Virus record (IMG/VR): IMGVR_UViG_3300021142_000002
Location: 124,001 to 188,000 of that record
DNA: 64,000 bases
Reading direction: 5' to 3' (one strand)
The translations under genes and the position numbers were made by a program. Under the pieces are notes generated by a model. The model worked only from the letters and a program-made list of their open reading frames with translations. It searched no databases and had not been told where the DNA came from. Shown one piece after another: positions 38,010 to 45,992 of the stretch; the first letter of the stretch is position 1; every line of letters begins with the position of its first letter.

Positions 38010-38213
38010 TTAAACAGCTAGTTCAGATAATAAAGCAGCGGCTACTAATTCTTCAGTTTCACTTTCTGCTAAAGGAGATTTACCTATTTTATCACCAATC
38101 ATTTCTTTTAAAATAGCAGTCCCTAATGAGACTGCACAAGCGATTGTTTTCTTAGTAATGATTTGTTTTTCTGGTAACTTTTCTTCTACTACTAAATTTA
38201 GATCATCCATCAT
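38010..38213 (-). CDS. Small hypothetical protein
   Basis: 67-aa ORF with GAGG RBS. Confidence 0.5.
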   Translation of the reverse strand: MMDDLNLVVEEKLPEKQIITKKTIACAVSLGTAILKEMIGDKIGKSPLAESETEELVAAALLSELAV

Positions 38214-38423
38214 TTATCCTCTTTTATATTTTAAACCCATTTGTTTAGAAAGCTCTTTTAGTACGGTATTCATAACACCCATAATTTCTGGAGAAACTAC
38301 GATACGTGCAGCAACGGCATAAAATCCAAATAAAGCATCGACTTTAATGCCATTTCTAGCAATAATGGGTGAGGTAGAAACTCGGCTAATAGTAGATTTT
38401 AACTGATTAGCAAACACGACTTT
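38214..38423 (-). CDS. vRNAP beta subunit (gp178-like), exon 2
   Basis: KVVFANQLKSTISR...; restores the conserved GD|K motif; spliced product about 1330 aa. Confidence 0.85.
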   Translation of the reverse strand, partial: KVVFANQLKSTISRVSTSPIIARNGIKVDALFGFYAVAARIVVSPEIMGVMNTVLKELSKQMGLKYKRG

Positions 38424-38755
38424 CCTTTTTGTTCCATTAATTCGTTAGATTAATGCGGTGTGCAAAGACACCCGCCCTTACTTTCATAAGGGAGCAGATC
38501 ATATCATCCACCTATTTGTAGGTGGTTTCCCATTTCTTCCCACTTGGGGTCTACAGGGTGGTAAGCCCTTGATCGTTGAACGTTCTCCATGTATTCTAAT
38601 GAATATTTAGGAGCTTCGCTGCTGATTGCCCAATCTTTATTATTTTTAAACATTCATATTTCTTTTCAAAAATACAGTAGTTAATAAAGCTCTAAGGGAT
38701 TTCCAGCAATTAAGGAAAAACGAATATAATATTACTATTATACCGGACTAATTAT

Positions 38756-39985
38756 TTAATTAAACAACTCTTCAATGATCCAGCCATTATATGGCATTTT
38801 ATAATGTAATCTATTTTTAAGGGTCTTTTTATCTAAACCTAAATATTTACGTAATGTTGCCGAGCTATTGAATTTTAAAATTTCATTATCTTTTATGTTA
38901 GTTATAATAAAATTTCTGGGAACAGAATGTTTAACTGTATAAAAGTTATCTAACCATTCTTTATCACTTTTAGATCTAAAAATAAAATTACCAATAGCAG
39001 TTTGCCGTTCAGAATAAACAGCTTTACGTACCATTGAAATATCAGTATTTGTTATTTTAGCCAGAGTGGTTGCATGTTCTGCATGTATTATTTCACCAGT
39101 TTCAATATTTTTAGCTTCATATCCGTTTGTATTCTCAATTATTTGATTTCGTTTTTCTGGTGTAGTGTAATACCATTCTGTAGTGTCATTGATATCTTTA
39201 ATTTCAAATCTTTTACAGAATAGTCTAGGTATTAAAATGCCATTAATTAATTTCTTAAATGGTCTGTTATGGAATTTTAATCCAATACTTTTAAACCCAG
39301 CAGTGTGAGAATGGTACTCAGTTATAGTATTATTTAAATAATCTCGTATAACACAGCGCTTATTATCAGTTCTTAAATTGCTAATAAAGGCATGATTATT
39401 ATTTTCTCTTGGCGTAACCCATTCCAAATTAATTATACGGTTATCTAATTTATTACCATTTTTATGATTAACATAAATTTTGTTACTTATATCGCTATTA
39501 TATATAAATGCTTTAGCCATCAGCAAATGTGTACATACGGGACGCCATCTATTTTTATCAGGATCCCTAATATTAACACATGGATATCCATAAGGATTTA
39601 GTCTTATACTCATTTCTAAATCTTTATTTTTATATAACGAAATAACTTTACCATTCTTATTTATAGCAAAATTAGTAAAACCAGGAATTATTCTAAACCC
39701 ATTCTTATAAAGAATAGGGTTAGTAAAATACATTACCATACCACATCTAACCTTTAATACCCTGCTAGTTATTGGCATAAATTTTATTTTAACTAATTCA
39801 TTAAGGGGTAACTTTACATCATAATGGCATAATAAACTAACCCATGTTTTATCCAATTGCACTATTTCACCAGAAATTTCTATATCAATAAATTGATCGT
39901 TTAAAACTATATCTTTTCCCTTAAATCTATAATTTCCATTAATATCAAATGAATGGTCTTCATTAAGATAAAATTTTTTATACAT
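38756..39985 (-). CDS. Intron-encoded HNH homing endonuclease
   Basis: THLLMAKAF...VNHKNGNKLDN...NLEWVTPRENNNHA; C-terminal NUMOD1-like repeats. Confidence 0.92.
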   Translation of the reverse strand: MYKKFYLNEDHSFDINGNYRFKGKDIVLNDQFIDIEISGEIVQLDKTWVSLLCHYDVKLPLNELVKIKFMPITSRVLKVRCGMVMYFTNPILYKNGFRIIPGFTNFAINKNGKVISLYKNKDLEMSIRLNPYGYPCVNIRDPDKNRWRPVCTHLLMAKAFIYNSDISNKIYVNHKNGNKLDNRIINLEWVTPRENNNHAFISNLRTDNKRCVIRDYLNNTITEYHSHTAGFKSIGLKFHNRPFKKLINGILIPRLFCKRFEIKDINDTTEWYYTTPEKRNQIIENTNGYEAKNIETGEIIHAEHATTLAKITNTDISMVRKAVYSERQTAIGNFIFRSKSDKEWLDNFYTVKHSVPRNFIITNIKDNEILKFNSSATLRKYLGLDKKTLKNRLHYKMPYNGWIIEELFN

Positions 39986-40018
39986 GTTATTTAACCTATA
40001 AATGATTGAATGTGTGTA

Positions 40019-40045
40019 TAAATAATATATATCTTAAAGAAATTT
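40019..40045 (-). promoter_or_regulatory. Early-type promoter inside intron, upstream of HNH
   Basis: Minus strand TTTCTTTAAGATATATATTATTT. Confidence 0.5.
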
Positions 40046-40064
40046 GTGTTTATTAAAAGGAATA

Positions 40065-43000
40065 ATCACCGCAATTCATTGGCAGCTCACCATCTATATA
40101 GATTTTAATAGCCAATTGATTTTCTACCACTTTCTTACCTGCTATTCGTACCGTCTCATCTATTCGTCCAGTCTTAGCTTCATCTAATTGATATCGCTTT
40201 ACACGCTTAGCTCTATTGGAGTCATAATACTCTGCAATCTTTTGCAAACTAAAATGCATATCATCTATTTTTCCATAGTAAACCACTTCAATATCAGTTA
40301 CTTTACCATAGACTTTAGCTTTCGGATTATTAGCGTTAATAGCTGTTAAAGCCTTAATAGCTGCGGCATCTTTAGCATCCACATTCTCGCCAATAGCCTG
40401 CTCTAAAGTACATAATATTGTTTCAGGGTCCACTACATCACCTATTTTTACTAGGTTATGAATGATGGTATCAAAGTCTACTATTACCCCGTGCAGAGTC
40501 GTTGTAGGCGTTACTAATTTACTAGCCAGTTCACTAGTAATAACTGATCCATCTTCAGTAACATCCATATTTTCTACTAAAGCTACTTTACAAATTAAGC
40601 TGCCTTTATAGACAACATTTCTAGGATTTATTTCTGATCTTTGAAAGAATCCAGAGTTAAAGACTAATGCATCACCTTTTTTAAACTGATGTCCTTTCTT
40701 TAAATCACTGATTCTAGTATGAGGTATAGTAACACCCGATACAGTACCATGATAAATACCTAATTCATAATTAACCAGTCTATCTTTACCATACTTAACA
40801 GTTAAAACATCTTTTTTATTATCTTCTACAATACCATCTTCTTCTGCAGTAACAACAAAGATATCATCTGCTTTAGCACCAATGACTTCTTCATAACCTG
40901 TTCTATAATGACTAGGATGATATCCATTGCAGGCAACTGTATGACTATCCTGAATGCCTTTATAATTTACGCGTTTACTATCATCGTGACTTAATGAAAC
41001 ACCAGCTAGGGTGGTACTACTTAATGCATTAGTGGCCCCATCTTTCTCATGATTAAATTCTCTAGTAACTCCTCTTAAATTGACAAAGTTAGGATTAGCT
41101 GTAAAGTATGCTCTAATACCTACCTTAGCACTATCTGGAGTAGACTCCGATATAACACCTAAATCCTTTTCATTATAAGCTCTAGTCTCCTTTACCATTG
41201 TTTCAGCAGATCTACCACCTGCGCCGCCATGAGTAAAAGATTCATGCTCCTTTAGATTGTGCAGTGGATTACTTTCTTCTACTAATGATACTGACTGATC
41301 TTGAATGATATCTAGCCAAACCGATTTAGGATTAATAGTCACACCCACATTACTCATACTACCACCTGCCCTGTGAGTACGCATAGCAGTAATCAATTGA
41401 TGGTATAACAAGCCCGATAGTCTTTCATAACCTTTATACCTAACTGCATTTAAATCATGTACAAAGTCATCCACTAATAAGCTATTAGCTCTTAATAATA
41501 AATGATAAAAATCAGTAGGCTCTCCCATCTCCTTTAATAGATTAAGAGTAATGGGTTCCATCCACATATCAAACATTAGTTTTAGTTCTCTTAAGTGATA
41601 ATTAGTGACACCTAATCCACTCATTAAACTACTGTAAATATTAGGTCTATTAAAGTCACTTCCTTTATATTTAGAGATATCATTTTTAATAGCCAGTAAT
41701 CCACCGACTATTAATTTATCTGCAGGTTTAGTTACTGTAATAACGTAGACGATATCTTTAAACTTTAGTTTAACTTCATCTGGATGATAAGCTAATCTTA
41801 CATTAGTTGCTGAGAGTGTAAAAGGTATTTGTAATTTCTTTAACATCTCATCTAAACCAAAGAGATAAGAAAAAGCTAGGCCTAATGGAATACGTCTATT
41901 AAAGACTGACATTTCAGAATATTCAATAGGTCCATTACCTAATGATGGATCTATTAAATAAGGTATAGTGCCTAATTCCTCAATTGAATCAGCTTTGGTG
42001 GATCTAATACCACTACCCCAGAATGTATAAACAGTCCCCTCATTATCCATTCCTAATAAACCTAATCCGCCAATTAACTCCCCAACTACCACGCAGTCTT
42101 CATCCTTAATTTTTTCATATAAAGAATGATCGTATTCATGTAATTTCTTTTCTATAGCAAAGTCTAAATGATATTGGAATCTAATAATTCCATCTACTAA
42201 AAATCTTCCACAGTCAAAACTGGTAATTGCTTCACAAATAGCCGTATAAGCTCTAGGTAATTGCAGATTCTTTATTTTATTAATACCATAGAGTAGATTA
42301 CCAATAGTTCCATCATTTTTAGTAAATCTATTTATAATCTCTTTTAAAATCCATTTACTGTAGTTACTTGCTACACTTTCATTTCTAGTAACAAATATCT
42401 TTCCATAATAACTAGTCAAAGAAACAGTATTAGATTTTACCTTAAAAATTGGAAGTTCTCCGCGCTGACTAGTTAAAGAATAGCGTATTCCACCAGCTAC
42501 GAAAGTACCATCAGCATTAACTACTGGTATAGTAAAATGAATAGTACTCGCCTCCCCATTAATAGGTTGCAGTGATACACTGTAGGTATCAGATTTAGTA
42601 ACTGCATTATTCTTTCTTTTTACTTTAATATCCTTTACTATTACCCCACCTTTGTGTAAATTTAACACTGTGGCTATAATATCTTTAGGCAATACTTCAG
42701 TAACGTATTTACTCGTAAATTCTTTCATGGTAGAGTGTAGCATACTCTCATCATGAATAGTAATACTTTCATCTAATAATTTAGTATCAGTAATAGTTAA
42801 ATCATTATCGGTAATTGCCATTTCCTCTAGTGTCTTGCCAGAGCCATGAGGGTCTAATATTGTCTTATACTTTTGACTGAGTTTTAATAATCCTTTTTGT
42901 TCAGCTTCAGATAGAGCACCCATTTCTCCAGCTTCTTTAATCTTCCTTACAATGACTTCGTTAGATACTAAATCATTTTCCCCTAAGTCCTTATCATTAA

Positions 43001-43847
43001 TATCTACAATGTCTGGATTGTTAGGTGTTCTTAAAGCTACTATACCATCCAGAAAGTGATATAAGCTATTCATGCAGACTTCAGGATCTTCATGTGACCA
43101 ATCTAATAGATCCTTTAATCTAATGATAATAGTATTATTTAACTCTACAAAGACTAGATTAACATGTTCGATCGCTTCATCAGATACTTTAGTAATAACT
43201 GATTCAATACTAGGGTTAATGATTCTCCATAATTCTAATAAGTCAAAACTCTCATTAGTGTGAAAATCTGCTAGTCCATTACTCGTAAAGTTCTTAGTAT
43301 ATTTACTTAAGTCAGATCGAGTAGGCAATATCTCTGGCAGTAGATATCTAATAAAGTGCTCTCTCCTACCACCAATCTGATTAATCATATCCCACATAGT
43401 CAGTCGAATGTTATACCATTCTTGATAGACGACTAAGGTATTATTAGTATACTTATTTAATCTAGGCAATAGAGCATAGTTAATAACAATAGGGGCACTA
43501 TTGTTACTTAATGACCTATCTAGATTAGTCAATGGTTTAATATTTAGATGTGTTTTTTGATATCGTCTGATAACATTATTAATAGGTATATTGGTGCTAC
43601 TTACATTGCCAATACCTACCTTTAAATGTAGCATGTGATAAATATAGATTGGGCTACTATTTCCATTTCTAATTAAACAATAGGAGTTGTCTATCCCTAC
43701 TGTTTGATCAGTTTCCCCAATATAGTGAATAACACTATTACTGGGTAGAAAAAACTGACTCGATGGATTATGTTTACCACCATTGACTATCTTACCAATG
43801 GGATAAGTCAAAAACTTTTTATCCCATTCTTTTATTGGTAAATACAT
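40065..43847 (-). CDS. vRNAP beta subunit (phiKZ gp178-like), exon 1
   Basis: SQRGE.P, GGAGGRS, ISE.TPDSAKVG, DDSKRV, EDGSVI, ending ..MNCGD; the track ORF reads 3 codons into the intron. Confidence 0.9.
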
Positions 43848-43856
43848 TACTTACTC

Positions 43857-44021
43857 CTATTCATATATTTTAGTAAAGCTATTGAGCACGAGTGGACTAA
43901 CTTTATCAATAACTCCGTATAATAATCCGCCACTAGGATTCATAAATGATTTTTTATTATTCATAAACTTTTTAGCTTCCTCTACCGCTTCTTTTGAGAT
44001 TACAAAATTTAGAGAGACTTT
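43857..44021 (-). CDS. vRNAP beta-prime subunit (gp180-like), exon 2 (absent from ORF track)
   Basis: KVSLNFVISKEAVEEAKKFM...KIYE*, 54 aa; its stop overlaps the AGGAG RBS of the next gene. Confidence 0.85.
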   Translation of the reverse strand, partial: KVSLNFVISKEAVEEAKKFMNNKKSFMNPSGGLLYGVIDKVSPLVLNSFTKIYE

Positions 44022-44534
44022 CGATTTGTTCAGATGAAGTCGTTAATTTCACCTCGCAGCATTACCTGCAGCTATAACTCTCGTTATAGACCAGACTATA
44101 TCTTCTACCTATTAATATATTCATTAATATACCAATAGGCAGCTTCCCATTTCTTCCCACTTGGGCTTTACACCGTGGTTAGCGGTTAGTCGTTGAACGT
44201 TCTCCATGTATTCTATAGAATATTTAGGAGCTTCGCTGCTGATTTTCTCTACCTAATAGTTTTCAAACATTGGTATTACTTTTCAATAATACAGTAGTCT
44301 ATTAGTCTAACAAGATGTTCCAGCAATTAAAGAAGAATCTATCCCAGTATTACTACTGAGTAGGACACTGATACTTAAACTATTTTATACTTAAAATGCC
44401 AATCTGAATTAATGGGTATTCCATTTAGATTCCTAATAATAGCTTTTCGGTTTACTCGAGTAACACCTTCAGCTATTTATAAGTATTACGATAAAAAGTA
44501 TTCAGAAAAATAAGTACAACTAGAATAAGCTAGA
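44022..44534 (-). mobile_element. Group I intron (513 nt, no intact ORF) in vRNAP beta-prime gene
   Basis: P AAUUGCUGGAAC, Q AAUCAGCAG, R GUUCAACGACUA, S AAGAUAUAGUCUG; exon ends in U, intron ends in G. Confidence 0.9.
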
Positions 44535-45992
44535 ATCACCATCGAAATCTGCTTGTAATCCTTCGGGTTTAGAACTGTGTACCGATACTGAATCTATAAA
44601 AGGTTGTCCTTTAATAGGCATGTTTATAGCCTTAGATTCATTTTCTACAGGACACCAATTATCATCCAATCTTTGCAGAATTTCTGTTTTTACTGTTGTT
44701 TGCAGGTAAACCATACTGCAGTAAATACTGCCTGTACCTACAATGGGATATCTTGTTATATAGGTAGCTACTTCTTTACTTTGTAGATAAACGGAAATAT
44801 AAAACATTTCAGTCCAAGTAATAGGTGCTACATTCTTTCTATCTAAACGTTTAGGTAAATCAGTAATGTCATAAAAGACCCTAAAGTATTTATCATCCCT
44901 ATAAAGCAATGCTGCATAATGACCATCTATTATAATAGGCTTATGCCTTGCATCTAATTTAGCATAACCAGTTAATAGTTTTTCAATACCTTTTTCACTG
45001 CCCCAATTATCTTTAACAAAAGTAGAAGGTGTAATCATTCTTTCTTCTAATGTCTTGCTATCGACTACCCAGATATCATTAGGTAAGTTATTGACTATTC
45101 TATTCATTGGACCTGCTTTAATTCCATAGATAGATAGCTCAGTAGTACCCTTTAAATACTGGTGTAAACCACAGGTTGTATCATTAACAGTAACTGCATC
45201 TATATCGCCTAATTTCTTAGGAGCAGGATCAATTGCAGTGATTACATTTCGTGTTCCGCCATGAATACTGCGGCTTGCCCATTTGGATAAGAAGAATCCT
45301 CTTTTACCCTCAAGGATAGATTCTATGTAATCATAGATGTTATTAAATCCTAATTGGAGAGACCATCTAACAGTATCTAAGATGGGATCATTTTTAGCGG
45401 TAGAGAAAGTAGAAATAGTATTAGCAGATCGCATGACTTTTCTATAAAGCGCGTTAATGTCATCTTCAACAGTTCTTTTATTTTCATCTATTTCAATGTC
45501 TCTAAGACCTGCTGGAATAACGACTAAATACCGATACATACATTTTTCATGAGACTTATCTAGAAACTTAATTCTTAAATCTCTAATCGGTGAATTATTT
45601 TCAGCATGTAAGATATCATGAAAGTGTTCCATAAAGAAGGCATAACCTGTTCTGCCATCTATGATATTAGATTTTACAAAGTCTTTTAGATTATTATCCC
45701 AAGTAGCATAAGCTGCTCCAGACATAATAAGTTTATATAAACCTTTTAATCTAGTGAGTTCTAAAAAGACTTTAGGATGCATGACTTCAGTACGCATGTC
45801 TATATAAGACAGTCTTCTTTGTCTAGTAGGTGATCCAAGATCACCAAAGATAATAGATGAATATAAACCTTGTGGATTAAATGATCCATCAATGGTATAA
45901 ATATCCATTGACTGAGTAGGCAGTAAGCCTGCTAATCGACTCTTATCAGGAGAGAGTAGATATAAATTAAATGGTAATCGCTTGAGTGCCAT
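44535..45992 (-). CDS. vRNAP beta-prime subunit (phiKZ gp180-like), exon 1
   Basis: FNPQGLYS..IFG, VIPAGLRD, GKRGF..KWASR....TRNVIT, RYP, catalytic ADFDGD; spliced product about 540 aa. Confidence 0.92.

What the first reader, a model, noticed from the sequence alone, without database searches (positions are those of the whole stretch)
38756..40064. Intron HNH endonuclease with its own early-type promoter: candidate weapon against co-infecting phages
Seen: an intact 409-aa HNH ORF in the P1 loop region, preceded within the intron by the motif that drives early genes, although the host vRNAP gene is a late virion gene. Known (recalled): the phiPA3 intron HNH gp210 cuts the vRNAP gene gp178 of co-infecting phiKZ (interference competition), while T-even intron endonucleases use late promoters. 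Inference: early independent expression to nick intron-less gp178-like alleles near the GDK codons.
Basis: partly seen in the sequence, partly recalled or inferred. Interest (0 to 1): 0.68.

Follow-up and report, generated by a model that had tools for sequence, protein, structure and literature searches.

The report
Homing-nuclease intron in phage polymerase gene
A self-splicing intron carrying an intact DNA-nicking "homing" enzyme interrupts the virion RNA-polymerase gene of an uncultured freshwater giant phage; it is a new example of a known kind of selfish element, and the idea that it is switched on early as a weapon rests on a weak promoter match that needs an experiment.

Summary
The ORF is real. 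It encodes a 409-aa I-HmuI-like HNH endonuclease with intact catalytic residues. It lies in the P1 loop of a 1,641-nt group I intron (40064..38424, minus strand) that splits the phiKZ-gp178-like virion RNAP beta gene at GD|K.

The genome's recurrent promoter motif precedes chimallin and non-virion RNAP genes, so it is the early class by homology. The site before the HNH start is only a degenerate copy. It has the 11-nt core at the usual 44 nt from the ATG but lacks the upstream ATTC and downstream G. It scores 10.7 bits against 15-34 for 24 accepted genes, yet clearly above the other 188 genes (at most 8.3).

That core lies in the 5' arm of a hairpin (-14.8 kcal/mol, z -3.7) that pairs with the start codon. 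The arm ends at the predicted start site, as in T4 intron endonucleases but with timing reversed.

The phiPA3 gp210 analogy is loose: same gene, but a site about 305 codons away and 25% identity. The true relatives sit at the identical site in Bacillus phage AgentSmith and an IMG/VR contig. AgentSmith's leader lacks its own early motif.

Verdict: a new member of a known kind. Early expression is plausible; the weapon role is untested.

The parts
40065..43847 (-). Exon 1 of the virion RNAP beta-subunit gene (phiKZ gp178 type), ending in the codons GGT GAT (Gly-Asp)
   Evidence: ORF 40053..43847; phrog_3148 RNA polymerase beta subunit, 1125 bits; tblastn homology to 285 phage records stops at residue 412 of 415, which is GD; alignment with PA7 gp189
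38424..40064 (-). Group I intron, 1,641 nt: 5' splice site after U40065, terminal G at 38424
   Evidence: RF00028 core hit; junction fixed by homology GD|KVVFANQLK against PA7 GD|KGVVANQMK; same junction in AgentSmith and L034
39986..40064 (-). 79-nt leader between the 5' splice site and the HNH start codon (17.7% GC)
   Evidence: Sequence; GC content
40013..40049 (-). Degenerate early-promoter-like element; 11-nt core TATATTATTTA at 40029..40019, 44 nt before the ATG; predicted start site near 40014
   Evidence: Matrix scans; start site placed by analogy with phiKZ, where the core is centred near -10 and 5'UTRs are 31-40 nt (PMC7598289; PMC8244752)
39959..40041 (-). Hairpin that sequesters the start codon: 5' arm 40041..40015 (contains the promoter-like core), 3' arm 39984..39959 (codons 1-9); U and G of the AUG are paired
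   Evidence: RNAfold -14.8 kcal/mol, z -3.7, 0 of 200 shuffles as stable; an RNA starting at 40014 is unstructured
38756..39985 (-). HNH homing-endonuclease ORF, 409 aa: N-terminal extension 1-95, NUMOD4-like/HNH core about 97-200, C-terminal NUMOD1-type modules
38763..38768 (-). Internal guide sequence GUUGUU (3' strand of P1), pairing with exon GGUGAU through a U-G wobble at the cut; lies inside the last codons of the ORF
   Evidence: Complementarity scan; it starts exactly where the RF00028 match begins
38475..38768 (-). Ribozyme core P2-P9
   Evidence: RF00028 63.3 bits, E 7e-16; 78% identical to the beta-prime intron core
38214..38423 (-). Exon 2 of the RNAP beta gene (69 aa plus stop), starting AAA GTC
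   Evidence: tblastn to 123 phage RNAP beta C-termini
44022..44534 (-). Related ORF-less group I intron in the neighbouring beta-prime-type virion RNAP gene, inserted after NADFDGD at the same 12-nt sequence GGTGAT|AAAGTC
   Evidence: RF00028 77 bits; junction from PA7 gp188 homology; 80% DNA match to the HNH intron core

Best explanation
This is a mobile group I intron carrying an I-HmuI-type HNH nicking homing endonuclease. It is inserted in the conserved GD|K codons of the virion RNAP beta-subunit gene of an uncultured freshwater nucleus-forming (chimallin-encoding) jumbo phage.

Shown:
- The ribozyme core, the splice junction that restores the conserved protein, and the position of the ORF in the P1 loop with its last codons overlapping the guide sequence and P2.
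- An intact catalytic motif and an I-HmuI-like fold.
- The same site, with a homologous endonuclease, in two distant phages.

Inferred mechanism. The enzyme nicks intron-less GGTGAT|AAAGT alleles, and repair copies the intron in (homing). On the polymerase pre-mRNA the start codon is locked in a hairpin, so ribosomes do not run into P1/P2 and disturb splicing.

The 5' arm of that hairpin carries a weak, degenerate copy of the phage's early (virion-RNAP) promoter. If that copy fires, it yields a short-leader, hairpin-free, translatable mRNA at the start of infection, when no polymerase pre-mRNA is being made. This is the T4 I-TevI logic with the timing reversed.

Any harm to a co-infecting intron-less relative would be a by-product of homing, as with phiPA3 gp210. 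It is not shown here.
For: Intron and junction.

Enzyme family and integrity: Pfam HNH_3; I-HmuI 1U3E by sequence, E 0.004, and by fold, Foldseek E 2.5e-6, probability 1.00, on a model of pLDDT 75.7. N173, H174, N186-W189, N195 and H198 are invariant across gp210, AgentSmith gp112 and Serratia 2050HW gp101. The protein aligns end to end with AgentSmith gp112: 31% identity, 409 against 411 aa.

Mobility: the same GGTGAT|AAA junction with a homologous HNH occurs in AgentSmith and in L034/G001. ORF GC is 26.7% against 33% for the exons.

Early class of the motif: it precedes chimallin, non-virion RNAP subunits and a helicase. The literature states that such bioinformatically detectable AT-rich motifs are the early promoters of these phages (PMC7598289).

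The HNH site is an outlier above background.

Hairpin and its loss in an RNA starting at 40014. Four core bases are unpaired in the hairpin, so pairing alone does not dictate the core.

Analogous start-region hairpins occur in the leaders of L034, AgentSmith and phiPA3 gp210. T4 precedent: PMC2988022.
Against: - The promoter-like site lacks three of the conserved features (ATTC, C, G). It scores 4.5 bits below the weakest accepted site, and on the strict matrix it sits within noise.
- The AgentSmith orthologue has no early-type motif, so early expression is not a conserved trait of this endonuclease lineage.
- P1 is weak: one Watson-Crick pair and five wobble pairs.
- Hairpins in AT-rich sequence arise easily, and the homologues' hairpins are individually not significant (z -1.2 to -1.7).
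- There are no RNA data for this phage.
- NUMOD1 is just below Pfam's cut-off.
Confidence: 0.5

Rival explanations
1. Ordinary selfish homing intron with no internal promoter. The AT-rich element exists only as the 5' arm of the translation-blocking hairpin, or is a decayed promoter relic. The endonuclease is then made at a low level, late, from the polymerase pre-mRNA or the excised intron.
For: The site lacks ATTC, C and G, and ranks 52 on the strict matrix. The AgentSmith orthologue has no early motif. The hairpin gives the sequence an independent reason to exist. Seven T4 free-standing endonucleases are promoter-less cassettes (PMC2988022). The Shine-Dalgarno is weak: AGG, against the genome's usual AGGAG.
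Against: The site is the best non-accepted match in the whole genome and lies at the canonical distance from the ATG; none of the other 188 genes reaches it. Four core bases are unpaired in the hairpin. The hairpin arm ends exactly at the predicted start site.
Confidence: 0.4
2. One reading: the endonuclease is an early-expressed weapon selected to disable the virion RNAP gene of co-infecting intron-less phages, like phiPA3 gp210 against phiKZ.
For: It has the same host gene and enzyme family as gp210. The target codons are conserved in relatives. The phage encodes chimallin, so the nucleus-based competition setting could apply. The early-type promoter-like element is present.
Against: The insertion site differs and identity to gp210 is 25%. 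No competitor or intron-less allele was seen in four freshwater runs. Intron-less relatives differ at 4-8 of the first 18 exon-2 bases, so cleavage is not assured. In the published case gp210 is normally excluded from the rival's nucleus (PMC11620839). Interference cannot be told from plain homing by sequence.
Confidence: 0.2
3. The endonuclease gene is a decaying, inactive passenger, and the intron persists only because it splices.
For: Four of the five introns in this genome have already lost any ORF. Only one HNH_3 gene remains.
Against: The frame is open from start to stop and aligns end to end with homologues. All catalytic residues are kept and the model is confident.
Confidence: 0.05

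Closest known systems
Bacillus phage vB_BspM_AgentSmith genes 111/112/113 (MW749006), and IMG/VR contig 3300046096_000189 (L034)
   Same: Identical insertion point GGTGAT|AAA in the gp178-type RNAP beta gene. Group I core present (RF00028 81.8 bits in AgentSmith). Full-length homologous HNH (31% and 34% identity) with the same N-terminal extension, placed in the P1 loop after a 50-64-nt leader.
   Different: Only 31-34% identical. The hosts and phage lineages are very distant. The AgentSmith leader has no match to that phage's early motif. These elements are not described as introns in the record: gene 111 is labelled 'putative HNH endonuclease' and genes 112/113 'hypothetical'.
phiPA3 gp210 intron endonuclease (Birkholz et al. 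2024, PMC11620839)
   Same: HNH_3 family nicking enzyme inside a group I intron in the same virion RNAP beta gene of a chimallin-encoding phage. The ORF follows a 66-nt leader whose Shine-Dalgarno is in a hairpin.
   Different: Inserted after DD (phiKZ D1072), about 305 codons upstream of GD|K. 330 aa, without the N-terminal extension. 25% identity. Interference was shown experimentally there and is untested here.
I-HmuI of Bacillus phage SPO1 (PDB 1U3E)
   Same: The only significant sequence and fold match. Modular NUMOD4/HNH plus C-terminal DNA-binding modules, intron-encoded, strand-specific nickase.
   Different: 174 aa against 409 aa. Resides in a DNA polymerase intron. 18% identity in the structural alignment.
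T4 td/nrdB/nrdD intron endonucleases I-TevI, -II, -III (regulation)
   Same: A promoter immediately upstream of the intron ORF sits inside a hairpin that blocks translation on read-through transcripts. The ORF's 3' end reaches into the ribozyme core (PMC2988022).
   Different: In T4 the host genes are early or middle and the internal promoters middle or late. Here the host gene is a virion (late-type) gene and the element resembles the early virion-RNAP promoter. The promoter is unproven. No operator-like copy of the homing site was found.

Membership tests
Group I intron (Rfam RF00028) | Conserved catalytic core P3-P9 | tested here: met
   63.3 bits against a gathering score of 50, E 7e-16, full model 1-253. 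Missed when 8 kb was scanned.
Group I intron (Rfam RF00028) | 5' splice site after a U paired to G of an internal guide; terminal G at the 3' end; removal restores the host reading frame | tested here: met
   U40065 pairs with G38768 of GUUGUU, a weak all-wobble helix. G38424 is followed by AAA GTC. The junction gives GD|KVVFANQLK, matching uninterrupted homologues.
Group I intron (Rfam RF00028) | Self-splicing activity | not testable with these tools
   No RNA run holds this phage.
HNH_3 / I-HmuI-like homing endonuclease | HNH catalytic motif (general-base His, metal-binding Asn/His) | tested here: met
   HNH_3 32.9 bits against a cut-off of 24.8. N173-H174, N195 and H198 are invariant in alignments with gp210 and others; H174 aligns with the VNHKNG His that holds gp210's catalytic H82.
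HNH_3 / I-HmuI-like homing endonuclease | I-HmuI-type fold | tested here: met
   Foldseek against 1u3e_M: E 2.5e-6, probability 1.00, the only hit below 1e-3. Model pLDDT 75.7.
HNH_3 / I-HmuI-like homing endonuclease | NUMOD-type DNA-binding modules | tested here: inconclusive
   NUMOD1 21.8 bits, just below the cut-off of 22.8. The N-terminal 1-90 gives only weak NUMOD4-like structural leads, TM 0.45-0.50.
HNH_3 / I-HmuI-like homing endonuclease | Site-specific nicking of the intron-less allele | not testable with these tools
   Needs purified protein and a substrate.
phiPA3 gp210-type 'weaponised' intron endonuclease | Same host gene (virion RNAP beta, gp178 type) | tested here: met
phiPA3 gp210-type 'weaponised' intron endonuclease | Same insertion or target site (after DD, phiKZ D1072) | tested here: not met
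   The phiPA3 exon break aligns to query residue 407/408 of the 715-aa probe; here the break is at residue 712.
phiPA3 gp210-type 'weaponised' intron endonuclease | Gives a fitness advantage by damaging a co-infecting phage | not testable with these tools
   Uncultured phage. No intron-less allele in four DNA runs.
Early (virion-RNAP) promoter family of this phage | Core TAYATYATYTA 39-54 nt (some 61-83) before the start codon | tested here: met
   TATATTATTTA at 40029..40019, 44 nt before the ATG
Early (virion-RNAP) promoter family of this phage | Upstream ATTC/TT element about 17 nt before the core, and G three to four bases after it | tested here: not met
   ACAC in place of ATTC and A in place of G. 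10.7 bits against 15.2-34.2 for accepted sites.
T4-type endonuclease regulation (promoter inside a start-site hairpin) | Stable RNA structure sequestering the RBS or AUG on long transcripts only | tested here: met
   -14.8 kcal/mol, z -3.7. The RNA from 40014 has a centroid energy of 0 kcal/mol. Computational only.
T4-type endonuclease regulation (promoter inside a start-site hairpin) | Mapped transcription start inside the hairpin | not testable with these tools
   No RNA data.

The most novel reading that the evidence does not exclude
A mirror image of the T4 rule. An intron endonuclease living in a late virion gene has acquired a weak copy of the injected virion RNAP's early promoter, placed inside the hairpin that silences it on the host-gene pre-mRNA. 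The nuclease would then be made in the first minutes of infection, kept apart in time from splicing, and present when a co-infecting genome arrives. In addition, the same intron family has spread to five sites in three RNAP-subunit genes, two of which share the identical 12-nt site GGTGAT|AAAGTC.
Probability: 0.25. Interest if true: 0.7.

Novelty: new member of a known kind. Interest (0 to 1): 0.5.

Why it matters
It adds a second, independent homing site (GD|K) in the virion RNA-polymerase gene of giant phages. The same site is used in phages of very different hosts, so this essential gene appears to be a recurrent target of intron endonucleases.

If the early-type promoter is real, it would show how a selfish nuclease is timed in phages that carry their own polymerases. 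It would also give a testable link between homing and competition between phages.

The clustering of five introns in RNA-polymerase genes, two at an identical 12-nt site, bears on how group I introns move to new sites.

Tried and rejected
- Rfam on the 8-kb region found no intron. The core appears only when a short stretch is searched.
- Megablast to phages matched only a 108-nt intron-core piece.
- No RNA-seq run holds this phage.
- A close-relative search in IMG/VR returned only an identical copy, so leader conservation could not be tested.
- Comparative test in AgentSmith: a clear early motif was defined, but it is absent from the HNH leader. This counts against a conserved early promoter.
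- Comparative test in G001 (L034 contig): k-mer and mismatch-tolerant searches found only a bidirectional terminator and no promoter family, so no test was possible. Its CATATATAG leader element is explained as a hairpin arm pairing with the AUG.
- I-TevI-style operator: the best leader match to the exon-2 half-site is 13/17, but 20% of shuffles do as well. Rejected.
- The best phiPA3 match of the HNH is not gp210. It is an unannotated ORF in the DnaB helicase intron region.
- PHROGs gave nothing for ten small motif-preceded genes.
- The large protein searches were not used, because family scans settled the protein's identity.

Full report
**Where the window lies.** The window is bases 124001-188000 of a 220-kb IMG/VR virus contig (33% GC, about 75% complete). 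The same sequence occurs in many freshwater metagenome runs, and none of them is RNA. The phage encodes a nuclear-shell (chimallin) protein and two sets of multisubunit RNAP genes. It is therefore a nucleus-forming jumbo phage of the phiKZ type. Its RNAP beta is at most about 43% identical to cultured phages.

**Anatomy of the intron.**
- The minus strand carries a 1264-codon ORF (40053..43847) matching phrog_3148, RNA polymerase beta subunit.
- Its homology to 285 phage records stops at residue 412 of the 415-aa probe, the GD of ...NCGD.
- The frame 38423..38214 reads KVVFANQLKS... and matches the C-termini of 123 phage RNAP beta genes.
- In phage PA7 the two parts are contiguous...GVGD KGVVANQMK....
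- The intron is therefore 40064..38424, 1,641 nt. It begins after the U of GGUGAU and ends in G.
- Rfam finds the group I core at 38475-38768 (63.3 bits, gathering score 50), but only when a short stretch is scanned.
- The best guide-sequence candidate, GUUGUU at 38768-38763, lies exactly where the Rfam match begins. It pairs with GGUGAU with a U-G wobble at the cut, though the helix is weak.
- Everything between the splice site and this guide, including the whole ORF, is thus the P1 loop. The last five codons of the ORF overlap the guide and P2.

I did not build or search a joined-exon sequence. The exons were handled separately by reference.

**The protein.**
- The 409-aa ORF (39985..38756) has Pfam HNH_3 above its cut-off and NUMOD1 just below.
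- Its only PDB relative, by sequence and by fold, is the nicking homing endonuclease I-HmuI, 1U3E.
- N173-H174, N186-L-E-W, N195 and H198 are invariant in alignments with phiPA3 gp210, Serratia 2050HW gp101, AgentSmith gp112 and three IMG/VR homologues. H174 corresponds to the His that Birkholz et al. mutated in gp210 (H82R).
- It has a 95-residue N-terminal extension. AgentSmith gp112 and the L034 and L035 proteins share it; gp210 lacks it. Its fold gives only weak NUMOD4-like leads.
- The ORF is 26.7% GC against 33% for the exons.
- It is the only HNH_3 gene in the contig.

**True relatives, and the relation to gp210.**
- Bacillus phage AgentSmith has the same arrangement: gene 111 ends ...GIGD; gene 112 is 31% identical over the full length; a group I core follows (81.8 bits); and gene 113 begins KVVFGNQMK. 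The junction is the same, GGTGAT|AAAGT.
- A 164-kb IMG/VR contig (L034/G001) has it too, with 34% identity and junction GGTGAT|AAAAT.
- phiPA3 gp210 is in the same gene but after the DD codons, about 305 codons upstream. It is only 25% identical. Serratia 2050HW and loci L036/L038/L040 also have the HNH upstream and an uninterrupted GD|K.
- This is therefore a separate homing-site lineage, not the gp210 element.

**The early-motif claim.**
- K-mer enrichment upstream of genes gives, besides the ribosome-binding site, one clear family. Its form is ATTC, about 16 nt, TAYATTATCTA, 3 nt, G. All copies are on the gene strand and most lie 39-54 nt before an ATG.
- Strong copies precede the chimallin gene, two non-virion RNAP beta-type subunits, a helicase and a polymerase operon, plus many small genes with no PHROG match.
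- In phiKZ-like phages the bioinformatically detectable AT-rich motif is the early virion-RNAP promoter. It is centred near -10, with a T-rich upstream part and 31-40-nt leaders (PMC7598289; PMC8244752). The class assignment here is sound but inferred.
- No copy lies upstream of the virion RNAP genes between 58570 and 40029. This fits a non-early host gene.
- The HNH site has the core variant TATATTATTTA, which six accepted sites share, 44 nt before the ATG. It has ACAC for ATTC, T for the most informative C, and A for the G.
- Each of these deviations occurs singly in some accepted site. Only the HNH site combines them all.
- Scores depend on the matrix. The strict matrix gives 4.8 bits, rank 52, within coding noise. 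The broad matrix gives 10.7 bits, rank 33, directly after all accepted sites, with no coding position reaching it.
- Gene by gene, 24 genes have 15 bits or more, the HNH gene 10.7, one gene 8.3, and all others 4.6 or less.
- The site is thus very unlikely to be chance. It is a weak or decayed family member.

**A hairpin that bears on the question.**
- The leader and the first nine codons fold into an imperfect hairpin of -14.8 kcal/mol (z -3.7; 0 of 200 shuffles). Its 5' arm, 40041..40015, is the promoter-like segment. Its 3' arm, 39984..39959, includes the U and G of the AUG.
- If the core is centred at -10, the start site falls near 40014, one base past the end of the 5' arm. An RNA beginning there is unstructured.
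- Four core bases are bulged in the hairpin, so pairing alone does not explain the core.
- This is the layout described for T4 I-TevI, -II and -III. There, a promoter inside an RBS-sequestering hairpin confines translation to promoter-proximal transcripts and protects splicing, because the ORF's 3' end reaches into the core (PMC2988022).
- Here the timing would be reversed: a late host gene and an early-type internal promoter.
- Start-region hairpins are also predicted in the leaders of L034 (AUG paired), AgentSmith (Shine-Dalgarno paired) and phiPA3 gp210 (Shine-Dalgarno paired). Individually these are not significant.

**Comparative tests of the promoter idea.**
- AgentSmith has its own clear motif, ACATATATAGTAAGTA, with 27 sites of at least 14 bits, for example before RNAP genes. 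Its HNH leader scores -11 bits. This is negative.
- For G001 no promoter family could be defined. This is inconclusive.
- No close relative of the window phage exists in the collections.

**Weapon or homing.**
- The enzyme's expected substrate is the intron-less junction. The three intron-bearing phages share GGTGAT|AAA.
- Intron-less relatives (PA7, L036, L040) keep GD|K but differ at several exon positions.
- No intron-less allele or polymorphism was seen in four freshwater runs.
- In the published case, interference needs the nuclease to enter the rival's nucleus, from which gp210 is normally excluded.
- Nothing here separates interference from ordinary homing.

**Verdict.** The finding is a genuine, intact intron-encoded HNH homing endonuclease. 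It is a new member of a known kind at a new, recurrently used site. Independent early expression is plausible (about 0.5), on the basis of an outlier but degenerate promoter match plus a T4-like hairpin. The weapon role (about 0.2) is analogy only.

Noticed in passing
window 44022-44534 (-), with exons 45992..44535 and 44021..43857: The neighbouring beta-prime-type virion RNAP gene carries an ORF-less group I intron (RF00028 77 bits) right after the catalytic NADFDGD motif. Its insertion site is the same 12 nt as the HNH intron's, GGTGAT|AAAGTC, and its core is about 78-80% identical. This suggests ectopic spread between two different genes through a shared short target.
   Followed up: partly
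genome G000:C1:106657-107867 (outside the window; locus L006 482-1692): Three more ORF-less group I introns (54-91 bits) lie in tandem in another RNAP beta-prime-like gene (phrog_2987). All five introns of this contig are in RNA-polymerase subunit genes. Their splice sites were not resolved.
   Followed up: partly
window 35498 (-); genome 24325, 74782, 190062: A nearly identical element of about 60 nt (GGATTCAAAAAAAATTTCATG..., carrying the core variant TATATTATTTTAATGG) recurs four times. In three copies it lies 83 nt before genes of 151-168 aa. It may be a distinct promoter subclass before a small gene family.
   Followed up: no
window 16090, 26008; genome 116917: A second conserved promoter variant (ATTCAAATTATTTTCATGTATATAYCATTTAATTGG) is present in three copies.
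   Followed up: no
L021 (AgentSmith MW749006 111864-117989): The public annotation labels the RNAP beta exon 1 as 'putative HNH endonuclease', and the real HNH (gene 112) and exon 2 (gene 113) as hypothetical proteins. The intron is not annotated.
   Followed up: yes
L002 4001-4828 (phiPA3 NC_028999 117450-118277): The best phiPA3 match to this HNH is an unannotated frame between two pieces of the DnaB-like helicase gene (gp134/gp131), next to a short 'putative endonuclease'. It is probably a degraded intron endonuclease.
   Followed up: no
G001 (IMG/VR 3300046096_000189): This 164-kb contig holds seven RF00028 hits (69-86 bits) and a very conserved bidirectional terminator (AATAACACCCC...GGGGTGTTATTTTTT) in many intergenic regions.
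   Followed up: no
window 38116-38135 (-): A terminator-like hairpin followed by a T-run lies inside the 67-codon ORF just downstream of exon 2. It could end transcripts from either the polymerase operon or the putative internal promoter.
   Followed up: no
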